Part shown: in pieces, positions 14,887-49,063 of the stretch
Numbering within the stretch: position 1 is the first letter of the stretch
Layout of the letters: each line of letters opens with the position of its first letter
Virus record (IMG/VR): IMGVR_UViG_3300044638_006750
Coordinates: 62,001-126,000 of that record
Direction: 5' to 3' (one strand)
DNA length: 64,000 bases
Position numbers and translations under genes: made by a program
Notes under the pieces: model-generated
Database searches by the model: none
Seen by the model: only the letters and a program-made list of their open reading frames with translations
Told to the model about the DNA's origin: nothing

Positions 14887-17475
14887 ATGAACAATATTAT
14901 AAAACTATTTGATAATGTAGCCAGTCTTTTTAGCTATACAAATGGCACCATTGTTCCATCTGGTCCCACACAAGGATATAACCCCATAGGATCAGGATAT
15001 ATTGGTAGTAGAGTTTCTTATTTAGCCAGAAATATATTTAATAATGGGGATGTGGAATTCGAGTCTGGTATCGGAACCATAGTATCTAGCGGTACTGGAT
15101 TGGCCATACAAAGACAAACTATCGCCAGTTCTTCTAACAACAATAATATTGTATCGTTTAGCACAGCCGGCACAAAAGCAGTATATATTGTTCCAAACGA
15201 GATAAATAATAAAAATGCTTTCAATAACTTCGTAAATACATCTGGATCATTCAGTATAGACTCATACAGAGCCACATATGTAATAGATTTATCTTCTGTA
15301 GATAGTAGCGGCACTCTTCCTCCGTCATTATCAGAAAATGCTGGACTAATTATCGATTTTAAAACCCAAGACACAAATAATCACTCACTAACAATATTTC
15401 CATCTGGCTCTCAAACAATAGATGAATTATCCTCATATATTATTGATGAAAATGATTATGTTCAATTTTTATCAACAGGATCAGGCTGGATATCTCTTGC
15501 GCAAAATATTATAGTTCAATCAGGAACACCACACGGACAATCATACTCATTACAAATTAATGATGGCAATGGTGGTTTTGAAGGATCTAATTTATTTACC
15601 AATAATAATCATGATTTATTAATTGGAGATAAATCCACATATACATCAATACTAAGAGCTTCTGGAAATACTGAATTTAATTTGAATAATGGCTCATATA
15701 ATTTTATTGTAAATGGAAAAGCTGGTAAAAATTTAGTATTCGATTCAGATGGTAAGCTAGGTATAAATATGCCAGCTAGCTATGCTCCTCAGGTTCCACT
15801 ACACATTCTACAAACAGCTTGCGCAGAAAGTATCAGAGTAGAGAATAGACATTCCTCAAATCCATCAGTTTTCACTTTGTATCATAGACCGACTACTGTT
15901 CCTTCTGTTGGGTCATCCCCATCTATTATTAATTTAGCTGGTAAAAATGATAGCGCTAATCAAGTTAATTATGCCGTTATCAAATCAAAAATTTTGGATG
16001 TATCATCTGCTGGATCTCAGGGTGCAATAGCTGTAGACGTTAATGATAATGGAAGTCCAAGTAATATTTTAGATATTAGTACTTCCTATACAAAAATTGG
16101 ATATAACAATACGGCATCAGATTCTAGCGTAATTGTTGGAAGAAATAATAATCTATCAGGAACAAATAATATACTATTTGGTCAAAATATTATTTATTCA
16201 GGTATTAATTCTACTGTTATTGGAAATAACAATAATCATTTATTGCTAACGGACACTAATATACTCATAAAAAATAGTGGATATCCAGAGTTAGTGGTAT
16301 CTGAAGGACGCTTAGGAGTAGGTAAAAATCCCTCATCTTCATTAGATATAAACGGAGATATTAGAACATCTGGTATCGTTTCGGATGAATATAAATTCAG
16401 CACAACATCCACAGATGGTCAACTGGTTTTAACTAGTGGACAAAATATTTATCCTAGTAATTATAATATTAATAATCTTATTGTTGGAAATAATAGTGGG
16501 CTATTAATTAAAAATGGAGATGTTACAGCTTCGGGTTTAGATAATATCTATATGACCCCAAGCGGTTTAACGATCAATAATGATGTATTTATCCCTAGTC
16601 TAACGAATAATTATCTACTAACGCTATCAAATTCTCAATTAAGCAATTATACTGCTATTGAATTAAATGCTTCAAATATTAAATTTGATAAAAATATTAA
16701 AGTAAATACAGATGTAGAATATACTATCAATAGCAACGAACCAGATATCTTTACAGATGGTTATGTGGTAACTAGTGGCTTGGTGATAGATAGAGCCTCA
16801 ACAATGCCATCGGGCGCTATGCTTATGCATATGGGTAATGGCGTCGCTCAATGGAAGACTGTCACAGGAAGCGACTTAATATTTAGTAATTCAGAATTAT
16901 CATGGAACAAATATGCTATTAGAAATGCTACTATAAATAGTTCTACACAAATTACTATAACAAGCAGTATTAGTGCAGAAGAGTTTGTTACTGGTGATAC
17001 TGTGGTAGTCATTAAAGACAATACAACTTATTATACTACAATTACTAGTCAAAGCGTAGTAGCAGGACAAACAGTATTGATTGTATCTGCTATGGGCGTA
17101 TCTTCAGGATCGGCCACAATCTACTCCGCGACTAGAGGAGGATATCTACTATCATCTGTAACAAATGGAGCAACTACTAATAGGTTTAGTATAAGACCAG
17201 GGACACCATCTATTTTTAATACTGGCAAAGCAGAAATAGATTTTGGTATATATGGAGCTGCAACAAATTATGCTCTTTATATTAACGCTAATTATTTAGA
17301 TAATAGCGAAGATGAGTCTCAGGTTGTTATTAATGGATCGATACCATACTCTGTTGGAGAACAGCAATATGCTGCTCTAACCGTTAGAGGATACTTATAT
17401 GCAGAACAACTTAGAGTGAGCGGAGATGTGGATATAGACTGTGGAGTTATAGTATTTACAGGAGTACCGTCATAA
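14887..17475 (+). CDS. Tail fibre-like structural protein (862 aa)
   Basis: N-terminal phage fibre motif (EFESGIGTIV...IQRQTIASSSNNNNIVSFSTAGTKAVY), a TLPP...TIFPSGSQTID repeat, and GIN.P...PLHI / GVGKNPSSSLDING fibre repeats. Confidence 0.75.
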   Translation: MNNIIKLFDNVASLFSYTNGTIVPSGPTQGYNPIGSGYIGSRVSYLARNIFNNGDVEFESGIGTIVSSGTGLAIQRQTIASSSNNNNIVSFSTAGTKAVYIVPNEINNKNAFNNFVNTSGSFSIDSYRATYVIDLSSVDSSGTLPPSLSENAGLIIDFKTQDTNNHSLTIFPSGSQTIDELSSYIIDENDYVQFLSTGSGWISLAQNIIVQSGTPHGQSYSLQINDGNGGFEGSNLFTNNNHDLLIGDKSTYTSILRASGNTEFNLNNGSYNFIVNGKAGKNLVFDSDGKLGINMPASYAPQVPLHILQTACAESIRVENRHSSNPSVFTLYHRPTTVPSVGSSPSIINLAGKNDSANQVNYAVIKSKILDVSSAGSQGAIAVDVNDNGSPSNILDISTSYTKIGYNNTASDSSVIVGRNNNLSGTNNILFGQNIIYSGINSTVIGNNNNHLLLTDTNILIKNSGYPELVVSEGRLGVGKNPSSSLDINGDIRTSGIVSDEYKFSTTSTDGQLVLTSGQNIYPSNYNINNLIVGNNSGLLIKNGDVTASGLDNIYMTPSGLTINNDVFIPSLTNNYLLTLSNSQLSNYTAIELNASNIKFDKNIKVNTDVEYTINSNEPDIFTDGYVVTSGLVIDRASTMPSGAMLMHMGNGVAQWKTVTGSDLIFSNSELSWNKYAIRNATINSSTQITITSSISAEEFVTGDTVVVIKDNTTYYTTITSQSVVAGQTVLIVSAMGVSSGSATIYSATRGGYLLSSVTNGATTNRFSIRPGTPSIFNTGKAEIDFGIYGAATNYALYINANYLDNSEDESQVVINGSIPYSVGEQQYAALTVRGYLYAEQLRVSGDVDIDCGVIVFTGVPS

Positions 17476-17954
17476 TGTCGAGCTTTAAATTTTTAAGAGA
17501 CGAAACAACTACAAACCCTCCAGCGCCAGATCAGATCGAGGTTGGTCAATTAGCGATCAGTTCTGTTACCGGTATAATATATATGAAATTAACTAATGGT
17601 GTGATTGTAAAATATTTGCCGGTCTTTGCTTCTGCTTCTACAGTGCCACAAATTACATTTAGTGATTTTTCTACTTTCTGTTGCACGGGAGATACTTTGA
17701 CTGCTACAGTATCTAATTTAACCGTTGGGGAAAGCTATACTTATGAATTTGTGGATTTAAATAATAATGGAGTAGAATTTACAGGAGATATTACTGGATC
17801 TTTGACGCCCACGTCGTCTAGTAGTCGTGATGTCAGTATTATATTAAGTATGGATGGACCAGAGAGTGTTACTCTAATAAAATTTATAGTCAAACTCAAC
17901 AATGTTATTGTTGCAGAAAATATAGCTTCTATATGCTGTAGAGCTTGTTCATAA
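17475..17954 (+). CDS. Small structural protein with an Mtd-N/hyaluronidase-N-like motif and one Cys-capped module A
   Basis: TAATG overlap with the previous gene. PAPDQIEVGQLAISSVTGIIYMK resembles the P...L..GELAIN...GKLF.K fibre N-terminal motif. Ends in ICCRACS. Confidence 0.7.
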   Translation: MSSFKFLRDETTTNPPAPDQIEVGQLAISSVTGIIYMKLTNGVIVKYLPVFASASTVPQITFSDFSTFCCTGDTLTATVSNLTVGESYTYEFVDLNNNGVEFTGDITGSLTPTSSSSRDVSIILSMDGPESVTLIKFIVKLNNVIVAENIASICCRACS

Positions 17955-17966
17955 TAGGAATAAAAT

Positions 17967-18908
17967 ATGCCAAAAGTTTTCAACTATACGATTAGTAAAT
18001 GCATAGATGGAATAGTTATACCATTTAGTGGCATACCTTTATCTGTTAATGAAACATATGCAGTCACTTTTAGTCATCAAGGATCGACCCCTAGTGGATC
18101 TATTATCCTCAATCCGAGCGGATATGCGTATACTCCAAGTTCCACAGGCAGCAATATCTATACCACTGCCCAAATTAGCGGAGTACTTGATTTAGCAAGT
18201 TCTCATTTAATTAAACTATCTATTACAAAAAATGGTACCAATATATATACAGACTTTGCTTCTATAGAATGCGGAGAATTGTGTATTACTCAAACACCAA
18301 CATATACTCCAACTGGAACACCGACTCCGACACCACCAGAAACACCAACTAATACTCCCACACAAACATCAACACCAACTCCAACCAGTACTACAACACC
18401 GACACCGACCAATACAGTTACTAATAGTCCTACTCCGTCAGAAACAGCTACTAATACGCCTACTCCCACACAAACCCCAACAAACACTCCAACCAACAGT
18501 CCAACCAATACAATTACTCCTTCTCAGACATCTACCAATACTCCGACTCCATCTATCACGCCCAGTAATACAGAGACGCCTCTACCGAAGCCGGTCGATT
18601 TCTCTCTTAGTTTTCCTGAGCATATTATTGATCTCGAATGCTGCTCTTCTCCAAAACTAATCAATGTAGCCTTAAGTGGTCAATTAAATAATGAATACTC
18701 TTATACATTTAGTAGTATTGATAATCCTGATTATGTAGTTTTTGATAATCCTAGTGGTATAGTATTTTTATCAGAACCTACAATGAATATTTATACTAAT
18801 ATTCAAATTCTAAGTGATACAGTTGAAAGCCTTATTAAGTGTCGTATTTTTGATGGATTTAATAATATCGATTCTATGGCAGTAGTAAGGTGCAATAATG
18901 AGAAATAA
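17967..18908 (+). CDS. Structural protein: module A - Pro/Thr linker - module A (313 aa)
   Basis: SD AGGA. PT tract at about 18288-18580, flanked by two Cys-capped beta-rich modules. Confidence 0.8.
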
Positions 18909-18918
18909 CATCTTGAAC

Positions 18919-18928
18919 AGTGTATTAA
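18919..18928 (+). promoter_or_regulatory. Candidate late-promoter motif AGTGTATTAA
   Basis: The identical 10-mer occurs in the intergenic gap at 26271-26280. Lies 40 nt upstream of ATG 18968. Confidence 0.35.
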
Positions 18929-18967
18929 TTACTAAGAGGACAGTCGTACCATTAATAGGCCATAAAA

Positions 18968-19708
18968 ATGAACGATAATAATCTATCTATAGATTTTGAT
19001 TTTAGCCACTATTTTGATGCTGATACATTTGATATTAACAATAAAATTGTAGAGCTAACTACAGATCAGGTAAAATGTAAAAGAATTATAGTATCAGTTA
19101 TTGCAAATGGATTAGAGCTTGGCAGACAATATACAGTACAATATTCTCTCAAAAATCTAGACGATAACATATTTACCCCAGCAACTGAAACATTTTTTGC
19201 ATCCAAGACCACACAAAAATTCTCTACTGTGGCAACTATCAATGATAGTCAAGTATATATCATGAATGTACTTATCACGAGAACAGGATCTCCAACATCT
19301 GCATCAGATATGGTGACGGTAAAATGTGGTTCAATTATAAATTGTCCAGCTGTACCAGTACCTATTGTTTTGTCTGAATATGTTCGTTTTAGCAATAGAC
19401 CACTGCTAACGGTTGCAAGTCCATACAGGTGTGATGCACAAGTAAATATAGAAGCAGATATAAATAATGCAACTCTTGGAGAAAATTATACATATACATT
19501 TTCTTCCCTAGAAACTAATCCTAAAACCACCATATCCTTTGAGCCTGCTACTGGAGTTGTTTGTGCCGGAAGCGAGATACAAAATATCAATACAGTGGCT
19601 AAGTTTATTGGACAAAGCAATATATATTGTATTAAATTAGTAGTAGAAAATGAAAATGCTGAACAATTCGAAGATTATTTACTGGTTCAATGCGCTACAT
19701 GTAGCTAG
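18968..19708 (+). CDS. Structural protein with two module A copies (246 aa)
   Basis: Motifs GLELGRQYTVQY...FTPATETFFA and NATLGENYTYTF...FEPATGVVCA. Ends in VQCATCS. Confidence 0.8.
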   Translation: MNDNNLSIDFDFSHYFDADTFDINNKIVELTTDQVKCKRIIVSVIANGLELGRQYTVQYSLKNLDDNIFTPATETFFASKTTQKFSTVATINDSQVYIMNVLITRTGSPTSASDMVTVKCGSIINCPAVPVPIVLSEYVRFSNRPLLTVASPYRCDAQVNIEADINNATLGENYTYTFSSLETNPKTTISFEPATGVVCAGSEIQNINTVAKFIGQSNIYCIKLVVENENAEQFEDYLLVQCATCS

Positions 19709-19717
19709 GAATAAATA

Positions 19718-20365
19718 ATGTCAAAACTATCAATAAAATTCGACAATAGAAATCAAAAAGTAGATAACTACGAATGTTGTCCAAAAGGTATCATATTATC
19801 ATTTAAAATAGAGAATATGGTTCCGGGTGTTCAGTATAATTGCAATCTGAGCAATACTGGATCAGGAACAGCTGTTTTCAAACCCAATAACTTTAATATT
19901 ACTGGTACACAGATAGTAGAAAGTTTTATGGTGGTCGGAGAGCTAAAAGGGTCTAGAGTTCATGTAATTAAAGTTACAATAACAAACAATAATGATCCGA
20001 CAGACAAGGTTGAAGATATTATGACACTGGAGTGTGGACAACCTAAATTTGTTACAACATCCTTTGAACAAAATAATATTATTATAGATTGTGGAGGTCC
20101 TGACAATAGTTTGATAGGCAGGGCTTCTAATCTATTAATTGGAAATAGATATACATATAGTTTTACTCCATTGGATACTAGGGAAGTGGGCAATTTACAA
20201 TTTATGCCAGCTAGTGGTACTTTAATCGCTACTACAGAAAGCGAAAATATTAATACTTTAGTTCAATATACTGGAAGATCTAGATCAGTTATAGCCAAAT
20301 TAACGGTGACGGACTCATACAACAACTTTTCAGACAGCACGCTTGCCACATTAAAGTGTAAGTAA
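19718..20365 (+). CDS. Structural protein with two module A copies (215 aa)
   Basis: Motifs ECCPKGII...NMVPGVQY and NLLIGNRYTYSF...FMPASGTLIA. The SD overlaps the upstream TAG. Confidence 0.8.
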   Translation: MSKLSIKFDNRNQKVDNYECCPKGIILSFKIENMVPGVQYNCNLSNTGSGTAVFKPNNFNITGTQIVESFMVVGELKGSRVHVIKVTITNNNDPTDKVEDIMTLECGQPKFVTTSFEQNNIIIDCGGPDNSLIGRASNLLIGNRYTYSFTPLDTREVGNLQFMPASGTLIATTESENINTLVQYTGRSRSVIAKLTVTDSYNNFSDSTLATLKCK

Positions 20366-20374: not shown

Positions 20375-22675
20375 ATGTTAAGTTTACAATTTACAAAATC
20401 AATTATACAAACTAATAATCCAGATGTCTGCTCATTAGGAGTAGAAATCTTTTTAAATATTAGTGGTTTAATACCTGGACACAGTTATTCTCTAAATTTT
20501 GTCAAGATCACCGAAGATGGTATTGCTAGTTTTGATCCTCCTTCTGAAACTTTTGTCGCAAATTCTACAGCGATTGGTAATTTTCTGGTTAAAGTAGTAT
20601 GTCAGGATGCTCGATACTATATTTTCAATGCTTCTTTAGTCGATTTGTCTACAGAAGAAACCGTAGAAGATAACATTACTCTTGACTGCGGAGGCATACC
20701 TCCAGGTATCACTCCAACTCCAACCAATACTCCCACACCTACAAATACCCCAAGTGTTACTCCTACTACTACTCCGACCACAACAGTAACGTCTACAGTT
20801 ACTAATACTCCGACGAATACCGGAACGCCTACCTCCACGCCGACACCAACTGCTACCAATACTCAAACGCCAACCAATACTGTCACCAATACAGCAACCC
20901 CTTCACAAACACCAACTAATACTCCAACTCCAACACAGACACCAACGATTAGTATTACTCCTACACAGACAACAACAAATACTCCAACTATATCTGTGAG
21001 CCCCACAAATACACAAACACCAACAAATACTGCTACTCCTACACAAACGCCAACTAATAGTCCGACTAATACAACTACCCCAACGAATAGTGCAACTCCT
21101 ACTAACACCAAAACTCCCACAACCACACCAACAAATACCTCAACACCCACTCAATCTAATACTCCAACTATTACAGCATCTCAAACTGCTACTCCAACGA
21201 CAACCTTAACTCCTACAAATACAACATCTATTACTCCAACACCTAGTCCAACCAATTATCCTTTGGACGAATGTATTGGTACGGATAAACCAGCCTACTA
21301 TCTAGGATGCTGCACAAACAATAAGCTGATTTCTCCACACCACAGGATTCAGATTGTATTTGTTAACCTAAATATTGGAAATAGATACTTTTTTGACATT
21401 GTTGGAACAGATAATGTTAAAGTATATAATACTGAAGATAATTTTGTGGCTCAATATTATGAATATCTTACTACAGCATTTATTGCGGTTAAGACGGAAT
21501 TTTGTGAATTAAATTACTTAACTATCAATTTGTATGATGAAAATAGAAACTTGGTCAAGACAAGATCGGTCTCAGTATCTTGCGAGTCTGACCAGAATCA
21601 AAATGTAAATGATTGTCAAGGATCTTCTGTATTCTTTATAAATGAACCAGAAAATAGGAATATTTGTTTCTATTTTGATGATGAATGTCGTAAAATTATC
21701 AATGTTACTCCTACTCCTTCACCAACAAATACTGCTACTCCCACGACTACTCCAACATCGACTCCAACTCAAACATCGACTCCAACTCCAACGAATACAC
21801 AGACCCCAACTAATACTATAACTCCCAGTACTACCACAACCAATACTCCTACTCCAAGCGTAACCAGTACAAACACTCCAACCCCAACAACTACTACAAC
21901 CACAACTCCAACGGCAACTGTTACCAGTAGCCCCACAGCAACTAATACTCCTACTCCAAGTTTGGTTAATAGATGCGCTGCGAGAAGTTATTTACTGGTA
22001 AAAGTCGCAACAACAGAAAATTTAGGATATACTAATCTATCTGGTAGTTTTAGATCAGCAATTATGACTGGATTTAGAACTCCATTAACTATTGATGGTA
22101 TAATATTAAATGTTGGTGATTTAGTTTTAGTCAAGAATAATATAAGTAGTACTTGGACAGGATCAGATGTTTATACCGTACAGAATGTAGGAAGTCAATT
22201 CGCACCATGGGTTTTAATATCCTATGTTCCAACCTCTGGAGATTGGTGTACAACATTCTCTGACAATATAGGTGGTACAGAAGACAAGTATTGTCCTGTT
22301 TTTGTGCAACAAGGAAATACTAACGGTAAGACAGAATGGTTACTACCAACTAATTTCTCCACACAGGGCGCGATTCCATCAGCTTTAAGGTGTGTAGACG
22401 ATGTAATTATTAGACAGGTCAGATTAGCTACAACATCTAATATAACACTATCTGGTACTCCAGTTATAGATGGTGTTCAAACGGCAGAAAACGATAGAAT
22501 TCTAGTCAAAGATCAAGATGATCCTATACAAAATGGTATATATATTGTAGCAGGCAATAATACCGCATGGTATAGATCTGGTGATGTTAGAGATAATTTA
22601 AGCTTAATTACAGAACTTAGAGTATATGTGTCACAGGGTATCGTTAATAAAGACACTGTTTGGACTATAGGTTAA
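20375..22675 (+). CDS. Fibre-like protein (766 aa): module A, long PT linker, module A, PT linker, two phage fibre domains
   Basis: The C-terminal part has two copies of the common phage motif VR(V/L)ATT.N(I/L).LSG...IDG....GD(R/L)(I/V)LVK(D/N). Confidence 0.8.
20710..21252 (+). repeat. Pro/Thr-rich linker (TPTNTPT-like), about 180 aa
   Basis: Translation is almost entirely T/P/N/S. The DNA is synonymously scrambled rather than an exact tandem repeat. Confidence 0.9.
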
Positions 22676-26269: not shown

Positions 26270-26270
26270 T

Positions 26271-26280: not shown

Positions 26281-26299
26281 AGAATAAAGAGACCCTACT

Positions 26300-26776: not shown

Positions 26777-26788
26777 GAGTTTAAATAA

Positions 26789-41924: not shown

Positions 41925-41938
41925 ACAGGGGACTAATT

Positions 41939-42163
41939 ATGGCCATTCAAAACATAGGATTAAACGACATAGTAGACAGGATTATACTCAGTAGTGCTAA
42001 TACCAACGAAACTTCCTCAATAGACAGGAAGAACGGTATTTTTAATACAGCATCCTATTTCCTTTTCTCGATTAATAAACCAGCCTTTGCTATAGAAATT
42101 GCTAATAAAATTGATCCATTAGAATCTAGTCCATCTAGGGACTCACAACCGTTATCCACTTAA
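41939..42163 (+). CDS. Small hypothetical protein (74 aa)
   Basis: SD AGGGGA at about 41927 precedes ATG 41939, which is preferred over the 41915 start. Fills the gap between two long genes. Confidence 0.55.
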   Translation: MAIQNIGLNDIVDRIILSSANTNETSSIDRKNGIFNTASYFLFSINKPAFAIEIANKIDPLESSPSRDSQPLST

Positions 42164-42164
42164 T

Positions 42165-44885
42165 ATGATAAATAATAATCTTCAAATTTACAGTTGGACA
42201 TATGGGTACTATATCGACAATATCACTAACAAAAAAATATCCATTGGTGATATCGTTAGATATAGAACTCTTAGTCAGGGAAAGATATTATTCAATAACA
42301 ATATAGATATTGTATCTAGACCTAGGGGCGGTGGTCAACCTACTGGTGATGCTGTACAAGATTATAATGGTATATTTAGCGATAATGATTTATTAAATAA
42401 GTCTAGACAATATATTAGCATACCATTTTCAAATCCTGTTCATATTTTATCAATAGAATTTAATGCAGATATTTTTACAGACATAGACGGAGTATCTCAA
42501 GGTTCGTTAAGTAAATTGTCTTCAGAGGATGCTTCGTACATATCTCTAATTTTTTCAGACAATACAACAAAAGATATTGCTATTGATCTTTGTGAATATA
42601 ATAGTGTCAATACTTTAAAATTTACAGCACCAGAAACACTTTATTATATTAAGGAAATCAGATTTTACGGACCTAAACCAAGAAAACATCAGGCTTTCGG
42701 CTCTACTATACAACCACTAATAGACGTTCCTGCTGATTATACAAGCAATCAAAGTGGTATTAATAGATTGTGGGGTTATCAACCAGATAAGTATTCTTTA
42801 AATCAAACCTCTTTTGTTTTAACTGATCCATCTCTTAATGGTAGAAATAATCTGATTTTTAAAGAAAACATAGCAACCGCATTTCAAACATACGCTCGTA
42901 ATAGAAAATCAACCCTGGATATAAATAAAGACGCTTTGCTTAATATTGCGTCGTCTACTCCATTGTTTATATCTGATTCTGTTCGTACATATGGGTCGTT
43001 ATACGGATATATCGAACTTATTTCACAAGACGTTGTTGATACTACGAATCTATTTTTAAAAAATATAACATTTAATTCACCATCATATTTTTATATCAAT
43101 AGTGAAAATCTAATACCTCCAAAAGACCCTCTGCTAGTTACCGGAGGTCTTTATCTATCGAGTACTGATAACAAAAATTTGAAGCAGAGAGTGGTGCATC
43201 TTTTTGCTCGTAGGTGGGATTCTTATGCCTCATCTATAGAAGACAACTGGATAAATGATGCTATTATACTTATCAAAAATCCTCAACATAGTGAAGTTGT
43301 CTCTACATATTTTAATCTAGACGACTTTGAATTTTTGGACGTATATGAAGCATCGGCTGTTAGTTTAAAGCATCTTAATATAGCAGTAGAAACCGAAGAA
43401 CCAACTCCTACACCAACAGCCACAATCACTAATACTCCAACTCCAACAAATACTCCAACACCAACAACATCTCCATCAGCATCCGCAGAACCTGTTAAAG
43501 CAGGATATGTCTATATTTGGGGAACCAATGGATATAAAGATGATATAATTGTTAATCCTCAAAAAATAGATCAAGATAATAATTTTATGGGTGTTGATCT
43601 ATCATTTACTAATATTTTTACTGGTATTAATCATGCAATAGCAGCAAGACAAGATAGGGTTTTATTCCCGATTAAAGACAACAGAAATTCTCAGTTAGGT
43701 CTACCATTTTCCGACAATATAACACAACTCAATAAACTAAATACGGTTATCAGTACAATTAATAGTCGCTGGAGAAACATATCTCTAGGGGATGACTTCA
43801 CATATCTGCTCAATATCGACTATGAAGTATACAGATGGGGAAATAATAAATACTATCAATTAGACTCAGATTTCGATAAGCTGCCATTACCGACTCAATT
43901 ATTAGTCGATGGCAAGGTTCGCTTTTTAGATATAGCCTGTGGTAAAACTCATGCATTTGTTATTCGAGATGATGGTTCTTTGTATGTTTGCGGAACTGTT
44001 GATGGTAATGTCATCAATCATTTTACTAGGTATACAAATGAAGTGGGCTGGGAGAAGATATTTACTAATGAGACTCATACATTTGGTATTAAACAAAATG
44101 ACACATCTCTATATGTATTAAGAGGTAGACTTAAGGATAACAGAATATCTATAAACTCCCAACCAGAATCTATAGATCCAGACATAGCACAATATAGAAG
44201 CATAGCTGTTGGAGATAGTCATATTTTAGTTGTTAAAAAAGATGGCACATTATGGGTTTTTGGAGATAATAATTACGGTCAACTAGGTACAGGGAATTAT
44301 GATCCTATATTTGACAAATTAACTTCCAGAGATAGTTATCAAAGTTGGTCCAAAGTTGCTGCTGGTAGTAGACATTCTTTGGCAATAAATAGTATTGGGG
44401 TATTATATGGTTGGGGATCTGGAGAAGATTACCAGTTCGGATTTGTACAAACTAATTTTGATAAACCAACATTAATTTGGGGAGGCAATTGGATAGACAT
44501 ATCGGCTAAGGGTAATATGAGCGGTGCTGTTGCTGGAGACTATATTTTCCAGGAACTTACTACTCAAACACCTACCCCAACGCCGACAAACACCGCAACT
44601 CCATCATTAACTCCTAGTGTTAGTGATACTCCTCCACCAACCCCTCCGCCTCCGTCACAATCAGCTACTGTTACTAAAACCCCTACAAATACACCAACGC
44701 CAACTGTTACTACTTCACCGACACCAACACCAACACCCACACAACCCATATTTTTATTTAAGATTATAGATGTATTACCAGTTACTCCACCACCAACTCA
44801 ATCGGCTTCTCCTCCGCCACCGTCTCCGGAACCAACACCTCCGGTCGAAGTATATGATTTTACAAATATAACATTTCCAGTATAG
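42165..44885 (+). CDS. RCC1-repeat structural protein with PT linkers (906 aa)
   Basis: IAVGDSHILVVKKDGTLWVFGDNNYGQLG and VAAGSRHSLAINSIGVLYGWG match the RCC1_2 consensus. Confidence 0.82.
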   Translation: MINNNLQIYSWTYGYYIDNITNKKISIGDIVRYRTLSQGKILFNNNIDIVSRPRGGGQPTGDAVQDYNGIFSDNDLLNKSRQYISIPFSNPVHILSIEFNADIFTDIDGVSQGSLSKLSSEDASYISLIFSDNTTKDIAIDLCEYNSVNTLKFTAPETLYYIKEIRFYGPKPRKHQAFGSTIQPLIDVPADYTSNQSGINRLWGYQPDKYSLNQTSFVLTDPSLNGRNNLIFKENIATAFQTYARNRKSTLDINKDALLNIASSTPLFISDSVRTYGSLYGYIELISQDVVDTTNLFLKNITFNSPSYFYINSENLIPPKDPLLVTGGLYLSSTDNKNLKQRVVHLFARRWDSYASSIEDNWINDAIILIKNPQHSEVVSTYFNLDDFEFLDVYEASAVSLKHLNIAVETEEPTPTPTATITNTPTPTNTPTPTTSPSASAEPVKAGYVYIWGTNGYKDDIIVNPQKIDQDNNFMGVDLSFTNIFTGINHAIAARQDRVLFPIKDNRNSQLGLPFSDNITQLNKLNTVISTINSRWRNISLGDDFTYLLNIDYEVYRWGNNKYYQLDSDFDKLPLPTQLLVDGKVRFLDIACGKTHAFVIRDDGSLYVCGTVDGNVINHFTRYTNEVGWEKIFTNETHTFGIKQNDTSLYVLRGRLKDNRISINSQPESIDPDIAQYRSIAVGDSHILVVKKDGTLWVFGDNNYGQLGTGNYDPIFDKLTSRDSYQSWSKVAAGSRHSLAINSIGVLYGWGSGEDYQFGFVQTNFDKPTLIWGGNWIDISAKGNMSGAVAGDYIFQELTTQTPTPTPTNTATPSLTPSVSDTPPPTPPPPSQSATVTKTPTNTPTPTVTTSPTPTPTPTQPIFLFKIIDVLPVTPPPTQSASPPPPSPEPTPPVEVYDFTNITFPV

Positions 44886-44896
44886 GATAATTAACT

Positions 44897-47800
44897 ATGG
44901 CACTAGTAGACGCAGTAGCAGACAACAGTTTAGTTTATATTATTTCTAATTCTAGACAGAACTTGCATGTACTGAATACTAGAAATCAGATAGACGATAT
45001 CAATCTTGACGGTTTGGCTGAAACAGTAACCATATCAGGAAAACCATATGCGGCTAAAAGAATATACAGTGTGATAGTATATGCTGGAGAAGTTTTGGCT
45101 GGCGGCGACTTTGGTTTAAAAAGATGGAATGTTGGCAGTAGAAAATGGGAAAGATATGCTACATTTACTGGAGGTATAAGTAGTTTAGTAGATAAGGGAT
45201 TATTTCCTAATAGCGTTCTTAGCATGAAGACATACAACGGTAAGTTATATATTTTTGGTAATTTTGTAGATAGTCTTATAGGTAGCACCCCGTCTGCGGT
45301 TACATCCAGATATATTGTGGTATACAACGGATCATTTTTTGAACCTGTCAATGGGGCGAATACACTTCCGATCATAAATCTTTCTGCGTATGGTCTTTTA
45401 AGCAAATCTAGTGTGAATCCTGCTTTAAATGACAATATTTTTTCTTTGTATATTTACAATAATAATATCTACATCTTAGATAAGGGTATTTTTAACGGAA
45501 AGTCCACCCTGCAAGATGTGGTTAAGGCAGATGCTTTAACAGATGTGGCTAATGATGGTACTACTTTGGTTTATTGTTTATTAGATGGTGCTACCACCTT
45601 CTCTACAAGAAAAATTAATGGTCAAATTCTCAATGATTATCAAATAGATAGTACTCTTTATATTACATCGGCGGTTAAAAAATCAGGATCTCAATATCAG
45701 CAAAATTTATTTTCTTCTATTGATTTAAATACATCAGATATAACTAGAGGATATGAAGTATTTTTAGGTACAACGTATGCTTCTGTTACTGGGGATATTT
45801 TTACAAATTATAATGTAGAAGGTAATTCGACAACATCTGCGATCAGCAATAAAGCAACAAGATTCTTAAAACAAAACAATGTTAAATTTAGAAAAATTCA
45901 TAATGGTATTTCTATACAAAATGGAACATATGAACAAACCAAAGCTGCCATTCTTATAGATACTAATAACAATCTATGGGCTCTGAAATCTCAATGGGTA
46001 GAGACGAATTCGAGTGCGGCATACTATGTACCTCTGTCTCAAGAAATTTCGTATCAAGCTTTTGTTCAATATAATTTAGATTATGGTCCACTAACTTTAA
46101 ACGGTAGAATTGTTGATGCTGTAATGGGATTAGATACCGTTGCAGTTTTAACAACTTCTGGAGAAATTTATATTTGGGGTAAAAATAGTTATGGTCAATT
46201 AGGTCCAGATATTCCTTTGGGCTCTATTATAGACTCTCCAGTCAAAGTTGCTGGAAATGGATATAAGAAATTATATGTGTGCGACAATACATATTATGCT
46301 ATCAAAGATGATAATACATTATACGCCTGGGGCCAAAGCACTACTGACTTAGGCGGTCAGTTAATTCCAGGAGTTGTCGGTAATGCTTTATTGCCTACTC
46401 AGATTGAAATAGCTATAGGGACTAATGATACTCCGATTAATAGAACTGGTAGTAGTGTTGTATCCGACCAGATGGGCTCATTCTGGAAAAGTATTAGTTT
46501 ATCTCCTGTTGGAATCTATGGAATAGATATCACTGGACTACTATATTATTGGGGTGGCCCAGAGGGAACATCTGCTTATCCTATTACTAGAACGGTATCG
46601 GGCAACTCAGAAAAACACACAGGCTTGTTCGATATAGAAAATATCAAACCTATTCCAGCTCCATCTGCTCCCGGTAATCCAGTATTGTTGGGTTGTCCAG
46701 CTTTTGTTAATGATGAAACTCCAATCATCGGAGATCCTGGTCAATATATTGATATTAGTCATGATAGTTGTTGGTATAATCATAATTATGTATTCAATTT
46801 CTCTATTCAGTCTAATACTACTGGTGTTCCTAGTACAGTATTCAGCTTGACTCAAAAATCTATTAATGCTGATTTAATTCATGTTAGTAGTTTTGTAACA
46901 TATACATACGTATTAAATGATAAAACTTATACAACATATTGGCACAAAAATTTGCTTAATGATGAAACTGGAGATAATTCTGTAGGCAAGATCAACACAT
47001 CTGCGTGGGTAAAAACAGCCAATGTATCCAGTTATATTATAAGTTTGCCTATTCCGCAGGCAAAAACCCTAGCAACCGGAAATATATATGAATTAAATTT
47101 AAATACTAATAATCATAAACAATTATTAATCAAGTTTCGTTTCAATAACAAACCATATTGGACTATCAATAGTCTCAGTGGAATAAGCACATTAGGATCA
47201 GTAAATACATTATCGGGTTTAGGACTAACTAATATTAGATTGTGTGCTATAGACGCTGCGTCTGCTCTGAGAATAGACACGGGCAGTCCTGTTAGATATG
47301 ACTATTTGACTAGAAATAAAAAATGGGATAGTACAAATGAATACTATGCTATAGATGATGATGGCGAATTGTATGGACTGCCATATTCTGGTTATCCTGG
47401 GGTATCAAATAAATATCCTTTTGTATTACCATATAAATATTATATCACTAAAGATAATAGTTTTACTGGGTCTACGTCTTTGTTTGATATTAATAATTCT
47501 TATATTTCTGACATACTAATAGATAATAATAGGCTTATTATTGCTGGATCTATTCCAAATGGTAACAGTTTTTATTCATATAAAAGTTTGGCTATTTATG
47601 ATTTAGAACAAAGTTCAGTAGTTAATTTAACCATAGATACTACATCTGCTATTAATACTGTTATCAATAAAATATTACCGCAGTCTGATTGGGTTCAACC
47701 ACCACCTCCTCCAACGCCCACTCCGACCCCTACTCAAACGCCAACAACTAGTTTAACACCATCTAATACTCCTACTATTAGTTTAAGTCCCACTAATACA

Positions 47801-48166
47801 GCAAGTCCCACTAATACTAGGACGCCGACTCCTACTATTAGTGAAACGCCGACATTAACTCCTACAATAAGTCAAACCCCAACAACAACCACTACTACAA
47901 CTCCAACAGGAACCCCACAACCTACTCCAACAAGAACTCCTACTAGAACGGTTTCTGCTACTCCTACTAATACTAGAACGCCTACCCCGACACCTACACA
48001 TACTCAGACTCAAACTCCGAGTAACAGTCCTACTCCAAGAAATTCTTGGGATATTGACGGACAGCAAATTGTCTTTACGGATGCAGAAAGAAATTCTGTG
48101 GATCTTAGTTGCAAGTGTATAGCAGAAGAGACCCTTGCCAGAGAGGGTAGGTCTGATGGTGTATAA
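44897..48166 (+). CDS. Beta-propeller/RCC1-repeat structural protein with a C-terminal PT linker (1089 aa)
   Basis: N-terminal propeller blades (VYAGEVLAGGDF, YNGKLYIFGNF) and RCC1-like VAVLTTSGEIYIWGKNSYGQLG. PT tract at about 47698-48040. Confidence 0.78.
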   Translation: MALVDAVADNSLVYIISNSRQNLHVLNTRNQIDDINLDGLAETVTISGKPYAAKRIYSVIVYAGEVLAGGDFGLKRWNVGSRKWERYATFTGGISSLVDKGLFPNSVLSMKTYNGKLYIFGNFVDSLIGSTPSAVTSRYIVVYNGSFFEPVNGANTLPIINLSAYGLLSKSSVNPALNDNIFSLYIYNNNIYILDKGIFNGKSTLQDVVKADALTDVANDGTTLVYCLLDGATTFSTRKINGQILNDYQIDSTLYITSAVKKSGSQYQQNLFSSIDLNTSDITRGYEVFLGTTYASVTGDIFTNYNVEGNSTTSAISNKATRFLKQNNVKFRKIHNGISIQNGTYEQTKAAILIDTNNNLWALKSQWVETNSSAAYYVPLSQEISYQAFVQYNLDYGPLTLNGRIVDAVMGLDTVAVLTTSGEIYIWGKNSYGQLGPDIPLGSIIDSPVKVAGNGYKKLYVCDNTYYAIKDDNTLYAWGQSTTDLGGQLIPGVVGNALLPTQIEIAIGTNDTPINRTGSSVVSDQMGSFWKSISLSPVGIYGIDITGLLYYWGGPEGTSAYPITRTVSGNSEKHTGLFDIENIKPIPAPSAPGNPVLLGCPAFVNDETPIIGDPGQYIDISHDSCWYNHNYVFNFSIQSNTTGVPSTVFSLTQKSINADLIHVSSFVTYTYVLNDKTYTTYWHKNLLNDETGDNSVGKINTSAWVKTANVSSYIISLPIPQAKTLATGNIYELNLNTNNHKQLLIKFRFNNKPYWTINSLSGISTLGSVNTLSGLGLTNIRLCAIDAASALRIDTGSPVRYDYLTRNKKWDSTNEYYAIDDDGELYGLPYSGYPGVSNKYPFVLPYKYYITKDNSFTGSTSLFDINNSYISDILIDNNRLIIAGSIPNGNSFYSYKSLAIYDLEQSSVVNLTIDTTSAINTVINKILPQSDWVQPPPPPTPTPTPTQTPTTSLTPSNTPTISLSPTNTASPTNTRTPTPTISETPTLTPTISQTPTTTTTTTPTGTPQPTPTRTPTRTVSATPTNTRTPTPTPTHTQTQTPSNSPTPRNSWDIDGQQIVFTDAERNSVDLSCKCIAEETLAREGRSDGV
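47698..48040 (+). repeat. Pro/Thr-rich linker in 44897..48166
   Basis: Direct translation. Confidence 0.9.
48158..48166 (+). promoter_or_regulatory. Candidate late-promoter motif GGTGTATAA
   Basis: Variant of GTGTAT(T)AA overlapping the stop codon, 31 nt upstream of ATG 48197. Confidence 0.25.
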
Positions 48167-48196
48167 CAGTATATTGACATTATAAGGAATATAAAT

Positions 48197-49063
48197 ATGG
48201 CTAATTTCAAAGTTAATTTCGTCACCAGTGGCAAAGTCATCAACTTTACAGATTGTTGCTGTCCAAATCTTATCAATGTTGTCTGTAGAGACATGGAGAT
48301 GGGACAAAAATATTATGTAACTTTTCAGGATACACCAACTTATAGAGCCCAAATTTTTCCATCTAAATACTCGTTCATCGCTGAATCTCGCGTAGTTGGC
48401 TTTAAGGTTATCAATGGAGGACTCGGTTTTACTTCAACACCAACAGTAGAAATTGTGGGTGGTGGAGCATCCACGGTTGCTACCGCTACTGCTGTTGTGT
48501 CAGAAAAATCTTTTCCTAATGATACCAAGGTCAAAACTATTACAGATATTATTTTGACCAATGGAGGTAAAGGATATACAAGTATGCCAACGGTTAATAT
48601 CGTTGGAGGGGGTGGACGAGGAGCCATAATAAAACCGATATTGAGCACACCTGTTAAAAATTTAACATTTTTTGTTGCTTTTGGATGCAACGATAAAAAT
48701 ATGCCAATACCAACACCATATCCCAGTAACACTCCTACGATTACACCAACTGCTACTCTTACTCAAACTCCTACACTTACTCCAACACCAACTTCTATAG
48801 CTCTAGAAATATTGCCAGCTAATGTTTCAACGTACTCCTCCGCATTGACAGAAAATCCTATAGCTTTAGATGATTATTTTGCGGACAGATCAACATATCC
48901 TGTGAGAGTATATTTGGGTGTTACAGGACAGAGTATTGTAGTGCCAACTGGTTATGATTATGCTATATATATTAAGCCAGATGGCAGTATTACGGATGGC
49001 GCTGTTATTGCTGGCACCAGTATCAAATTTAAGAGTCAAATTTTATTAGGCAAGGGTATATAA
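48197..49063 (+). CDS. Structural protein (288 aa): module A interrupted by two NGGxGYTSxPTV repeats
   Basis: TDCCCPNLINV...MEMGQKYYVTF...IFPSKYSFIAES, then INGGLGFTSTPTVEIVGGG / TNGGKGYTSMPTVNIVGGGG, then STPVKNLTF. Confidence 0.75.
   Translation: MANFKVNFVTSGKVINFTDCCCPNLINVVCRDMEMGQKYYVTFQDTPTYRAQIFPSKYSFIAESRVVGFKVINGGLGFTSTPTVEIVGGGASTVATATAVVSEKSFPNDTKVKTITDIILTNGGKGYTSMPTVNIVGGGGRGAIIKPILSTPVKNLTFFVAFGCNDKNMPIPTPYPSNTPTITPTATLTQTPTLTPTPTSIALEILPANVSTYSSALTENPIALDDYFADRSTYPVRVYLGVTGQSIVVPTGYDYAIYIKPDGSITDGAVIAGTSIKFKSQILLGKGI

What the first reader, a model, noticed from the sequence alone, without database searches (positions are those of the whole stretch)
14887..49063. A 34-kb island of signal-peptide-less adhesin/lectin genes between the TMP and the distal tail genes
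Seen: 18 genes separate the TMP from the putative distal-tail/hub genes. They carry domains typical of bacterial cell-surface proteins (LecA-like, LamG, DUF642/choice-of-anchor-C-like, YVTN, delta-60, RCC1/BLIP-II), but none has a recognisable signal peptide or sorting signal. Established: in most long-tailed phages Dit/hub genes follow the TMP directly. Inference: an elaborate virion appendage (branched fibres or a capsid/tail coat) for sampling many glycans, e.g. to capture hosts with thick or proteinaceous envelopes.
Basis: partly seen in the sequence, partly recalled or inferred. Interest (0 to 1): 0.68.

Follow-up and report, generated by a model that had tools for sequence, protein, structure and literature searches.

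The report
Giant fibre-gene block in phage tail
An uncultured 233-kb lake phage with a very long tail carries 17 conserved genes for fibre-, lectin- and propeller-like proteins between its tail-length ruler gene and its tail-tip genes; they most likely build an unusually elaborate host-catching apparatus, an extreme variant of something phages are already known to do.

Summary
Window 14887-49063 has 17 co-oriented, tightly packed ORFs (not 18; 11,299 aa). They lie between a 4,284-aa tape measure protein and two paralogous genes whose predicted N-terminal domain has the distal-tail-protein (Dit) fold.

RCC1 (four proteins), LamG and YVTN pass curated cut-offs. DUF642/choice-of-anchor-C and delta-60 are significant but below cut-off. 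LecA was not found. No protein has a signal peptide, membrane segment, lipobox or LPXTG-like motif (heuristic).

It is not a foreign or variable island:
- Its GC equals the genome's.
- All 17 genes have colinear orthologues (60-92% identity, pN much lower than pS) in a related contig.
- The same order recurs in relatives of 44-54% identity.
- In distant relatives the giant TMP is likewise followed first by a homologue of the first gene. In the one distant relative whose locus reaches a recognisable Dit-like gene, only five genes intervene.

The first protein models as a fibre or tailspike: an XD1 domain as in CBA120 TSP4 and T4 gp9/gp10, then a T5-fibre-like domain. A new ~105-aa Cys-flanked domain occurs at least 13 times, only here. 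Pro/Thr linkers make up 13% of residues.

Best reading: a lineage-expanded tail-tip adhesion apparatus. Virion location and branching remain inferred. New variant of a known kind.

The parts
2020..14874 (+). Tape measure protein, 4,284 aa. By the usual ~0.15 nm per residue this implies a tail of roughly 0.6 um (inference).
   Evidence: PF10145 PhageMin_Tail, E 1.1e-22. Relatives have TMPs of 2,878-6,945 aa.
14887..17475 (+). 862-aa fibre/tailspike-like protein. The N-terminal ~400 aa are the conserved core that follows the TMP across the whole clade. Residues 112-207 have the XD1 fold; residues 315-420 form a fibre domain; the C-terminal half is lineage-specific.
   Evidence: Model pLDDT 72. 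CBA120 TSP4 residues 79-178: Z 12.3, rmsd 2.2, 20% identity. KP1 baseplate: Z 11.8. T5 pb1 and Bdellovibrio fibre domains: Z 8.1-8.8. Atlas neighbours carry Peptidase_S74, Peptidase_G2 or pectate lyase, all at TM under 0.5. Homologues sit directly after the TMP in L008, L010, L011, L012, L014, L019 and L020.
17475..17954 (+). 159-aa protein, the conserved partner of the 862-aa family. It has a conserved N-terminal ~45-aa motif followed by one copy of the ~105-aa Cys-flanked domain.
   Evidence: Homologues at 33-43% identity sit in the same position in L008, L010 and L020. Alignment A4. Domain hit E 1.7e-7.
17967..20365 (+). Three small proteins (313, 246 and 215 aa), each with two copies of the ~105-aa Cys-flanked domain. 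In the 313-aa protein a 98-aa Pro/Thr linker separates the two copies.
   Evidence: Paralogy; HMM hits; alignment A5. The N-terminal domain of the 313-aa protein also matches the N-termini of the 207- and 1,345-aa proteins of L008.
20375..22675 (+). 766-aa protein: N-terminal Cys-flanked domain, two long Pro/Thr linkers (35% of residues), and a C-terminal ~85-aa domain shared with phage tail-fibre and virion proteins.
   Evidence: phrog_11518 tail fiber protein E 2e-19; phrog_24595 virion structural protein; phrog_2647 head decoration. Full-length orthologue in G001, 81.6% identity.
22697..24823 (+). 708-aa protein with delta-60 / DUF5122 beta-propeller-type repeats.
   Evidence: TIGR02608 E 2.9e-12, below cut-off. 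PF17164 E 1.5e-5, below cut-off.
24833..27871 (+). 478-, 158- and 360-aa proteins. The 478- and 360-aa proteins carry the Cys-flanked domain, and residues 27-158 of the 478-aa protein resemble residues 1752-1873 of the 2,266-aa tail-tip protein.
   Evidence: Weak fimbrillin-like hit in the 360-aa protein, E 0.007.
27883..33174 (+). 1,763-aa multidomain protein: choice-of-anchor-C/DUF642-like domain, RCC1 propeller and four Pro/Thr linkers.
   Evidence: RCC1_2 41.9 bits and RCC1 34.5 bits, above cut-offs. TIGR04362 E 3.3e-7, below cut-off. Linkers.
33186..39845 (+). 2,219-aa multidomain protein: LamG, YVTN/YncE-type propeller, RCC1 propeller, and a C-terminal ~98-aa module shared with the 687-aa protein.
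   Evidence: PF13385 48.2 bits; RCC1 85.7 bits. TIGR02276 46 bits, above cut-off. Paralogy.
39861..42163 (+). 687-aa protein: four ~90-aa modules joined by Pro/Thr linkers, then a C-terminal Cys-flanked domain. It is followed by a conserved 82-aa ORF.
   Evidence: The 82-aa ORF has a 60% identical orthologue in G001, pN 0.23 against pS 0.77.
42165..48166 (+). 906- and 1,089-aa RCC1 beta-propeller proteins with Pro/Thr linkers.
   Evidence: 906-aa protein: WD40_RLD 148 bits, RCC1_2 89 bits. 1,089-aa protein: RCC1_2 42.9 bits.
48197..49063 (+). 288-aa protein: N-terminal Cys-flanked domain plus a domain shared with PHROG families of virion structural, tail-fibre and baseplate-wedge proteins (Ig-like is my reading).
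   Evidence: phrog_701, phrog_460, phrog_19630, phrog_5342 and phrog_32294, E 3e-13 to 7e-6. Domain hit.
49103..52900 (+). Two paralogous Dit-like proteins, 611 and 652 aa (44% identical). This is the real start of the canonical tail-tip module.
   Evidence: Model pLDDT 74. VIA-wide Dit matches Z 9.2-11.8. Foldseek PDB and BFVD hits to Dit, baseplate and tube-fold proteins. 79 homologues, none with a Pfam family.
52904..58675 (+). 1,923-aa protein, candidate Tal/hub with a long extension.
   Evidence: Position directly after the Dit-like genes. Atlas feature neighbours (0.95-0.96) carry PF14594 Sipho_Gp37 or PF06605 Prophage_tail. No sequence match to PDB or to SPP1 Tal. More than 150 homologues of ~2,000 aa.
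58678..64000 (+). 5' part of a 2,266-aa tail-tip gene that runs to window-equivalent 65478. It shares a domain with the 478-aa protein of the block.
   Evidence: No family hit.

Best explanation
The 34-kb block is the expanded form of a fibre cassette. In a whole clade of uncultured aquatic phages with giant tape measures, this cassette is encoded directly after the TMP and before the Dit/Tal-like tail-tip genes.

In this lineage it encodes 17 cytoplasmically made virion proteins. I infer that they assemble at the distal end of a probably non-contractile tail about 0.6 um long. The parts would be:
- a trimeric fibre/tailspike-like protein (862 aa) with its conserved 159-aa partner;
- a set of small proteins built from a novel ~105-aa Cys-flanked beta domain;
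- five or six large 'beads-on-a-string' proteins in which putative carbohydrate- or surface-binding modules hang on long, flexible Pro/Thr linkers. These modules are RCC1, YVTN and delta-60 propellers, LamG, and a choice-of-anchor-C/DUF642-like domain.

Functionally this would be a multivalent, long-reach adhesion device for first, reversible capture of the host surface. The Dit/Tal core would then engage.

Shown: gene content, domain families, lack of export signals, synteny, purifying selection, the fibre-like and Dit-like predicted folds, and a tape measure long enough for a roughly 0.6-um tail.

Inferred: virion location, attachment at the tail tip, glycan binding, and the non-contractile tail type.
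For: Position and packing: all 17 genes are co-oriented with gaps of 0-60 nt, inside the structural operon that runs from terminase and portal, through the TMP, to the Dit-like genes.

First gene: the model matches the XD1 domain of CBA120 TSP4 (Z 12.3, rmsd 2.2, 20% identity) and of the KP1 baseplate (Z 11.8), and fibre domains of T5 pb1 and Bdellovibrio fibres (Z 8.1-8.8). The nearest Atlas shapes are phage clusters with Peptidase_S74, Peptidase_G2 or pectate lyase, all at TM under 0.5.

Clade-wide order: TMP, then the 862N family, then (wherever it was checked: L008, L010/L011, L012, L014, L020) the 159-aa family. The TMP-862N adjacency holds in L008, L010/L011, L012, L014, L019 and L020. 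In L008 only five genes separate the TMP from the Dit-like gene.

Links to virion proteins: the C-terminus of the 766-aa protein and the 288-aa protein match PHROG tail-fibre, baseplate and virion families. The 478-aa protein shares a domain with the 2,266-aa tip protein.

Selection and ancestry: there are 1:1 colinear orthologues in G001 at 60-92% identity, with pN/pS of 0.08-0.34. That is as constrained as the Dit/Tal-like genes. GC is 0.353 against 0.352 for the genome. A relative at 54% identity keeps the same order over ~36 kb.

No export signals, as expected for proteins assembled in the cytoplasm.

Binding-type domains. The Cys-flanked domain is confined to this block in the six-frame genome.
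Against: - There is no direct evidence that any of these proteins is in the virion: no cultured relative, no proteome, and no match in 50,697 GenBank phage records.
- Only XD1 of the TSP4/gp10 architecture is matched, and XD1 is a spacer, not a docking module.
- Residues 208-310 of the model are low confidence.
- Ten of the 17 proteins have no curated family, and only two proteins were modelled in this work: the N-terminal 430 residues of the 862-aa protein of the block, and the neighbouring 611-aa Dit-like protein.
- In phage phAPEC6, RCC1-like proteins were instead proposed to have an internal DNA-ordering role (PMC7247149).
- The tail type is inferred. No sheath family was found, but the neighbouring proteins are all unassigned.
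Confidence: 0.6

Rival explanations
1. The proteins are virion-associated but sit elsewhere than the tail tip. They could be whiskers or side fibres along the very long tail tube, at the neck, or as a coat on the capsid, giving diffuse weak adhesion (Ig-like decoration) rather than forming the host-recognition device.
For: - The recurrent ~105-aa beta domain and the domain in the 288-aa protein resemble the accessory, probably Ig-like, domains common on phage heads and tails. The PHROG hits include 'head decoration' and 'head closure Hc2' families.
- Pro/Thr linkers also occur in a 461-aa protein encoded beside the capsid genes.
- A 0.6-um tail offers a very large surface.
Against: - The genes lie after the TMP, with the tip genes, not with the head or tube genes.
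- The first protein has baseplate- and fibre-type domains.
- One block protein shares a domain with the 2,266-aa tip gene.
- No block gene resembles a known tube or capsid decoration family above threshold.
Confidence: 0.15
2. The proteins are not virion components. They would be made late and either act inside the cell or be freed at lysis, for example to bind host envelope or debris, to block superinfection, or, for the RCC1 proteins, to organise DNA as was suggested for phAPEC6.
For: - No signal peptides, so release would need lysis.
- phAPEC6 encodes eleven RCC1-like proteins for which an internal role was proposed (PMC7247149).
- No proteomic evidence exists for virion incorporation.
Against: - It is hard to see why 34 kb of non-structural genes would be kept, in conserved order, between TMP and Dit across relatives of 44-75% identity.
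- The first gene is fibre-like.
- There are domains in common with tail-fibre and virion families.
- No enzymatic or DNA-binding family was detected.
- The many cysteines (up to 21 per protein) fit extracellular proteins.
Confidence: 0.1
3. The premise is wrong. The functional distal-tail ring and hub would be encoded within the first genes after the TMP (the 862N/159 pair or neighbours). The 611/652/1,923-aa genes would then be a different tube-fold assembly, so nothing is really 'inserted' between TMP and Dit.
For: - The 862N and 159-aa families are the invariant genes after the TMP across the clade, which is the position that Dit and Tal usually hold (SPP1 record; PMC7291167).
- The tube fold of the 611-aa protein is shared by tube, initiator and hub proteins, and Z values for those are only 2-4 units lower.
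- Residues 1-105 of the 862-aa protein weakly resemble domains in siphophage tail-tip proteins, Z 4.4-4.9.
Against: - The 862N model shows no tube-fold match; its strong matches are to fibre and baseplate-periphery domains.
- By sequence pattern, the 159-aa protein is a short N-terminal motif plus one Cys-flanked beta domain, not a Dit-sized tube-fold protein. It was not modelled.
- The best matches of the 611-aa protein are true siphophage Dits, and BFVD hits include 'Dit-like N-terminal domain' proteins.
- The next gene has Tal-type feature neighbours.
Confidence: 0.1

Closest known systems
Branched tailspike complex of Ackermannviridae (CBA120 TSP1-4), built on T4 gp10-like domains
   Same: - Several receptor-binding proteins are encoded side by side.
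- The first protein here has an XD1 domain that superposes on TSP4 residues 79-178 (Z 12.3, 20% identity).
- A conserved N-terminal part is combined with variable distal parts.
   Different: - Only XD1 is matched. The XD2/XD3 jellyrolls that dock the other spikes (PMC8825819) were not found.
- The distal modules here are propellers and lectin-like domains on Pro/Thr linkers, not beta-helix depolymerases.
- CBA120 is a myovirus, whereas this phage looks siphovirus-like.
- The genes here lie between the TMP and Dit.
Hyperbranched fibre systems of jumbo Klebsiella myophages (phiKp24, RaK2, phiK64-1)
   Same: A jumbo phage that devotes a large, multi-gene block to an exceptionally complex adsorption apparatus (PMC9700779 and PMC10253068, listed).
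   Different: - Those are contractile-tailed phages whose fibres are mostly capsule depolymerases.
- No sequence relation was found.
- Here there are no enzyme domains and the tail is very long and, by inference, non-contractile.
Siphophage adhesion devices built on the TMP-Dit-Tal triad, with plug-in RBPs and carbohydrate-binding modules
   Same: A Dit-fold protein followed by a Tal-like giant, with ancillary binding proteins around them. PMC7291167 describes the triad as a platform for plug-in receptor-binding proteins.
   Different: - In SPP1 the TMP, Dit and Tal genes are contiguous. The review's figure (PMC7291167) draws the adhesion-device genes of lambda, T5, p2, TP901-1 and 80alpha, which by my own knowledge show the same arrangement.
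- Here 17 genes (five in distant relative L008) come between TMP and Dit.
- The Dit-like gene is duplicated.
- The ancillary set is about ten times larger.
RCC1-like protein expansion in jumbo coliphage phAPEC6
   Same: Multiple RCC1-repeat proteins in one jumbo phage genome: eleven in phAPEC6 (PMC7247149) and four here.
   Different: - phAPEC6 is a myovirus, and its authors suggested a DNA-ordering role.
- Here the RCC1 propellers are fused to LamG, YVTN or choice-of-anchor-C-like modules and Pro/Thr linkers inside the tail gene block, which points to surface binding.
T5 L-shaped tail fibre pb1
   Same: Residues 315-420 of the 862-aa protein match pb1 residues ~990-1129 (Z 8.1-8.2, rmsd 2.5). 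pb1 is a side fibre of a siphophage; by my own knowledge it mediates reversible first binding to polysaccharide.
   Different: The match is at the level of one domain only, with no detectable sequence homology. No intramolecular chaperone domain (Peptidase_S74) was detected by Pfam.

Membership tests
Tape measure protein (2020-14874) | PhageMin_Tail / TMP family signature in a very long protein encoded ahead of the tail-tip genes | tested here: met
   PF10145, E 1.1e-22, 81.4 bits against a cut-off of 33.2.
Distal tail protein Dit (611- and 652-aa proteins) | N-terminal tube-like beta-sandwich with helix (the Dit N-domain fold) | tested here: met
   AF2 model, residues ~15-139: 80alpha Dit-position chain Z 11.8 (rmsd 2.4, 112 aligned); TP901-1 Z 10.1; SPP1 Dit Z 9.9; p2 Z 9.2. 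This is a predicted structure, and tube and initiator proteins score Z 7-9.
Distal tail protein Dit (611- and 652-aa proteins) | Sequence membership in a curated Dit family | tested here: not met
   No Pfam or PHROG hit. hhalign against SPP1 Dit gave probability 0.1. No PDB sequence hit.
Distal tail protein Dit (611- and 652-aa proteins) | Gene directly downstream of the TMP | tested here: not met
   It is separated from the TMP by 34.2 kb and 17 genes. This is the anomaly under study.
Distal tail protein Dit (611- and 652-aa proteins) | Hexameric ring between the last tube ring and the Tal trimer | not testable with these tools
   Needs cryo-EM or a multimer model.
Tal / baseplate hub (1,923-aa protein) | N-terminal gp27-like four-domain fold | not tested
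The only evidence is Atlas feature neighbours (0.95-0.96) carrying PF14594 or PF06605, which is a lead only. Sequence profile searches were negative.
Tal / baseplate hub (1,923-aa protein) | Gene immediately after Dit | tested here: met
   52904 follows the 652-aa gene, which ends at 52900. The order is the same in G001, L008, L013 and L015.
T4 gp10 / CBA120 TSP4-type branching adaptor (862-aa protein) | XD1 nine-stranded beta-sandwich | tested here: met
   Residues 112-207 against TSP4 residues 79-178: Z 12.3, rmsd 2.2, 92 aligned, 20% identity. CpaA (Z 9.2) and StcE (Z 8.2) also match, as for authentic XD1.
T4 gp10 / CBA120 TSP4-type branching adaptor (862-aa protein) | XD2 and XD3 jellyroll trimers that dock partner fibres | tested here: inconclusive
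   In the VIA-align search no match extended past TSP4 residue ~180. Model residues 208-310 have pLDDT 36-55. I do not file it as a branching adaptor.
T4 gp10 / CBA120 TSP4-type branching adaptor (862-aa protein) | Physical binding of neighbouring fibre proteins | not testable with these tools
   The one complex job gave no verdict. It is recorded under Tried and rejected only.
RCC1 / BLIP-II beta-propeller | RCC1 repeats above Pfam gathering scores | tested here: met
   RCC1 and RCC1_2 are above cut-off in the 1763-, 2219-, 906- and 1089-aa proteins. PHROG RCC1 families match the first three of these.
LamG / concanavalin-like lectin | Laminin_G_3 above the gathering score | tested here: met
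   2219-aa protein, residues 560-697: 48.2 bits against 27.6.
YVTN / YncE beta-propeller | YVTN repeat model above cut-off | tested here: met
   TIGR02276: 46 bits against 27.85. YncE and PQQ-propeller models have E 1e-17 to 3e-22 but fall below their whole-protein cut-offs.
DUF642 / choice-of-anchor C | Family model above the curated cut-off | tested here: inconclusive
   TIGR04362: E 3.3e-7, 30.7 bits against 120. PF04862: E 3.8e-4, 20.7 bits against 27. Probably a distant relative.
delta-60 repeat | TIGR02608 above cut-off | tested here: inconclusive
   708-aa protein: E 2.9e-12, 46.2 bits against 76.5.
LecA / PA-IL galactophilic lectin | PA-IL family match | tested here: not met
   No such hit at E <= 0.01 in any of the 17 proteins. 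No fold test was done on the unassigned proteins.
Exported bacterial surface proteins | Sec/Tat signal peptide, lipobox, LPXTG, PEP-CTERM or T9SS C-terminal domain | tested here: not met
   No signal-peptide-like N-terminus, membrane segment, lipobox or LPXTG-like motif by hydropathy and motif scripts; one stray PEP tripeptide in the 906-aa protein without a hydrophobic tail. No sorting-domain family in Pfam, or in NCBIfam for the 9 proteins scanned. SignalP was not run.

The most novel reading that the evidence does not exclude
A widespread, wholly uncultured clade of aquatic siphophage-like viruses with 0.4-1 um tails has re-ordered the tail module so that a fibre cassette precedes Dit. In this lineage the cassette has grown into a new kind of host-capture organ. 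It would consist of about 16 different proteins in which many lectin and propeller heads, together with a previously undescribed Cys-flanked domain, are tethered on long Pro/Thr linkers. Those linkers might be O-glycosylated by the phage's own RgpF-like glycosyltransferase. The result would be a flexible multivalent 'net' at the tail end, not a set of rigid fibres.
Probability: 0.2. Interest if true: 0.75.

Novelty: new variant of a known kind. Interest (0 to 1): 0.5.

Why it matters
If these proteins are on the virion, this phage devotes 15% of its genome and more than 11,000 codons to adsorption. That would be one of the largest adhesion gene sets reported for a (probably) non-contractile-tailed phage, and it is made of binding modules, not depolymerases.

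It also documents a clade-wide exception to the TMP-Dit-Tal gene order that annotation pipelines and structural reviews rely on. Automated 'gene after the TMP = Dit' calls would be wrong for this whole group.

The clade is common in lake and marine metagenomes but has no cultured member. The binding modules may therefore be the best available clue to its host's surface.

The ~105-aa Cys-flanked domain and the 611/652-aa and 1,923-aa families are large protein families without any annotation.

Tried and rejected
- Foreign-island idea: rejected. GC is 0.353 against 0.352 for the genome, and the block is colinear in relatives.
- Hypervariable or diversity-generating region: rejected. There are no template/variable repeat pairs. 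Every internal DNA repeat is Pro/Thr-linker coding sequence, and pN is much lower than pS throughout.
- Module swap in the 766-aa protein: my first tblastn suggested that only the N-terminus was conserved in G001. That was an artefact of the linkers. The orthologue is full-length and 81.6% identical.
- Programmed frameshift in the two ORFs before the TMP: not supported. The 325-aa ORF more likely starts at ATG 1035, behind an AAGGAG motif.
- Sequence searches that found nothing:
  - PDB phmmer for the 862-, 611-, 1,923-, 345- and 392-aa proteins.
  - PDB profile searches with A5 and A6.
  - hhalign against SPP1 Dit and Tal.
  - tblastn against 50,697 GenBank phage records for the 862- and 652-aa proteins.
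  - The IMG/VR scan for the 862-aa protein.
- Nearest terminase relatives (Bacillus phage Basilisk group, 24-29% identity) have an ordinary, short post-TMP region, which was uninformative.
- Complex prediction for 862 (residues 1-310) with the 159-aa protein: the tool could not be reached six times, then returned 'no answer' with score 0.00. This is no evidence either way.
- Reads laid on 41900-47800 in four lake runs gave only short, identical, low-depth contigs plus pile-ups of unrelated linker DNA. No structural variants could be trusted.
- Host identification was not attempted beyond noting the habitat. No tRNA genes lie in the window.
- The large representative-protein search was not used, since the word search had already found ample relatives.

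Full report
**What the sequence is.** The window is bases 62001-126000 of a single 232,683-bp virus record. Its ends share 365 bp at 96.7% identity. A + strand structural operon runs from genome 44381 to 130016. It starts with a large terminase and a portal (PHROG). It contains a 4,284-aa tape measure protein at window 2020-14874 (PF10145, E 1.1e-22). The DNA occurs in lake-water and freshwater metagenomes from 13 studies, three of which may be the source sample. No cultured phage in GenBank resembles the tail genes. The terminase is only 24-29% identical to those of Bacillus siphophages and a Microcystis siphophage.

**Checking the observation.**
- Gene count: 14887-49063 holds 16 ORFs of 100 aa or more plus a conserved 82-aa ORF. 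All are on the + strand with gaps of 0-60 nt.
- Domains above curated cut-offs: RCC1/RCC1_2 in four proteins, Laminin_G_3 in the 2,219-aa protein and the YVTN repeat in the same protein.
- Domains with significant E-values but below cut-off: choice-of-anchor C/DUF642 in the 1,763-aa protein and delta-60/DUF5122 in the 708-aa protein.
- LecA/PA-IL was not found.
- Ten proteins have no curated family.
- Export signals: hydropathy and motif scripts found no signal-peptide-like N-terminus, membrane segment, lipobox or LPXTG-like motif, and only one stray PEP tripeptide without a hydrophobic tail. SignalP was not available.

- The 611- and 652-aa proteins are paralogues, 44% identical, and belong to a large unannotated family (79 hits).
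- An AlphaFold2 model built on 41 sequences (pLDDT 74) has an N-terminal domain at residues ~15-139. In an exhaustive structural search its best matches are siphophage Dit proteins: 80alpha Z 11.8, monocin tip Z 11.2, TP901-1 Z 10.1, SPP1 Z 9.9 and p2 Z 9.2. Generic tube proteins score Z 7-8.5.
- Foldseek against PDB and BFVD agrees, and returns proteins named 'Dit-like N-terminal domain'.
- The next gene (1,923 aa) has Tal-type neighbours (PF14594, PF06605) in a language-model feature search. Profile searches against PDB and SPP1 Tal found no sequence evidence, so this remains a lead.
- Conclusion: a Dit-like pair followed by a Tal-like giant starts at 49103. In SPP1, by contrast, TMP, Dit and Tal are contiguous, and the triad is regarded as universal in siphophages (PMC7291167).

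**What the block is.**
- First protein (862 aa). It has 41 homologues; the distant ones share only its N-terminal ~400 residues. A model of residues 1-430 (pLDDT 72) matches the XD1 domain of CBA120 tailspike TSP4 (residues 79-178; Z 12.3, rmsd 2.2, 20% identity) and of the KP1 baseplate (Z 11.8). Residues 315-420 match domains of the T5 L-shaped fibre and of Bdellovibrio fibres (Z 8.1-8.8). The nearest Atlas shapes are phage clusters carrying Peptidase_S74, Peptidase_G2 or pectate-lyase domains, all at TM under 0.5. It is therefore a fibre or tailspike-type protein.
- A caveat on branching. XD1 is described as a spacer. The docking modules XD2 and XD3 (PMC8825819) were not detected, so branching is not shown.
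- A recurrent new domain. An HMM seeded on the paralogous N-termini of the 313-, 246-, 215- and 766-aa proteins revealed a ~105-aa Cys-flanked beta domain. It has at least 13 copies in ten of the block's proteins and none elsewhere in the six-frame genome. PDB profile hits to plastocyanin, fibronectin and Ig are not significant.
- Links to virion proteins. The C-terminus of the 766-aa protein and the 288-aa protein match PHROG families annotated as tail fibre, baseplate wedge or virion structural protein. The 478-aa protein shares a domain with the 2,266-aa tip gene.
- Linkers. Pro/Thr-rich linkers of up to ~180 residues make up 13% of the block.

**Evolutionary context.**
- An 80-kb IMG/VR contig (G001) is colinear from inside the 862-aa gene onward. 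All 17 genes have 1:1 orthologues at 60-92% identity, and pN/pS is 0.08-0.34. The Dit/Tal-like genes are at 75% identity with similar ratios.
- A relative at 54% identity keeps the same order over ~36 kb. One at 44% keeps the first ten genes, and another contig of similar divergence (L015, from a different sample) keeps the last ones but has a single Dit-like gene.
- In distant relatives (30-38% identity), TMPs of 4,202-6,945 aa are followed directly by the 862N family. In L008, L010/L011 and L020 the 159-aa family comes next; L019 showed no 159-family match. In L008 only five genes (8.4 kb) separate the TMP from the Dit-like gene.
- GC of the block equals that of the genome.
- The block is therefore an ancestral, TMP-proximal fibre cassette that has expanded in this lineage. 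It is not an acquired or variable island. No diversity-generating repeats are present.

**Most likely mechanism.** The proteins are made in the cytoplasm, which explains the lack of export signals. I infer that they assemble at the distal end of a tail about 0.6 um long. The 862-aa fibre and its 159-aa partner would be the conserved elements. The propeller and lectin modules would hang on flexible linkers as multivalent, long-reach binders for reversible capture of the host surface before the Dit/Tal core engages. Virion location, tip attachment, ligand type and the non-contractile tail type are all inferences. I put this reading at about 0.6.

Rivals, each at 0.10-0.15:
- decoration of the shaft or capsid;
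- non-virion late proteins, including the DNA-ordering idea raised for the RCC1 proteins of phAPEC6 (PMC7247149);
- a misplaced Dit call.

**Comparison and novelty.** The closest functional analogues are the branched tailspike complexes of CBA120-like phages and the hyperbranched fibres of jumbo Klebsiella myophages (PMC8825819, PMC9700779). The closest architectural frame is the siphophage TMP-Dit-Tal platform with plug-in binding proteins (PMC7291167). This case differs in four ways:
- gene order, since the cassette comes before Dit throughout the clade;
- size, at 17 genes and 34 kb;
- a duplicated Dit-like gene;
- composition, with binding modules on Pro/Thr tethers and a new small domain instead of depolymerase spikes.

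I rate it a new variant of a known kind, with interest 0.5. It is not surprising that a jumbo phage has many fibres. The scale, the conserved re-ordering and the unannotated families are what make it worth following up.

**Limits.** The one complex job gave no verdict. Laying metagenome contigs on 41900-47800 showed only short, identical, low-depth contigs and pile-ups of unrelated linker DNA.

Noticed in passing
L006:13116-14027 (genome 57116-58030, upstream of the window): An RgpF-like glycosyltransferase (PF05045, E 1.8e-19) is encoded among the head and tail genes. With 13% of the block's residues in Pro/Thr linkers, this raises the possibility that the phage glycosylates its own virion proteins.
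   Followed up: no
window 49103-52900: The Dit-like gene is duplicated (611 and 652 aa, 44% identical). A relative at ~47% identity (L015) has a single copy. The two may form a hetero-hexamer or two stacked rings.
   Followed up: partly
window 17637-48568, scattered (alignment A5): A ~105-aa Cys-flanked beta domain with no significant Pfam, PHROG or PDB match occurs at least 13 times in ten proteins of the block and nowhere else in the 233-kb genome.
   Followed up: partly
window 43400-43470 and 44660-44740: In four lake metagenomes, Pro/Thr-linker coding DNA recruits 50-370x depth of unrelated contigs, while flanking sequence sits at 3-6x. Such linker-coding sequence is therefore abundant in these communities.
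   Followed up: no
L008, L010, L014, L019, L020 (relatives): Tape measure genes of 2,878 to 6,945 aa occur across the clade, implying tails of roughly 0.4 to 1 um if the usual length rule holds.
   Followed up: no
L006:11525-12907 (genome 55525-56910): A 461-aa protein next to the capsid genes combines a proprotein-convertase P-domain (PF01483, E 3e-8) with a Pro/Thr linker. It may be a head decoration built in the same style as the tail block.
   Followed up: no
L013:1-923 and L015:2063-5299 (relatives): Domain shuffling occurs among orthologues. One relative has a single 2,839-aa ORF carrying DUF642, LamG and RCC1 together. Another joins an FGE-sulfatase domain to an RCC1 propeller.
   Followed up: no
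window 2020-14874: The TMP gene has 40% GC against 35% for the genome and for the block.
   Followed up: no
window 716-1928: Two ORFs (109 and 325 aa) precede the TMP, in the position of tail assembly chaperones. They overlap, but the second probably starts at ATG 1035 behind an AAGGAG motif, so no frameshift need be invoked.
   Followed up: partly
genome 1-364 and 232319-232683 (outside the window): The record's two ends repeat each other at 96.7% identity. This fits a complete or near-complete genome assembled from a mixed population.
   Followed up: no
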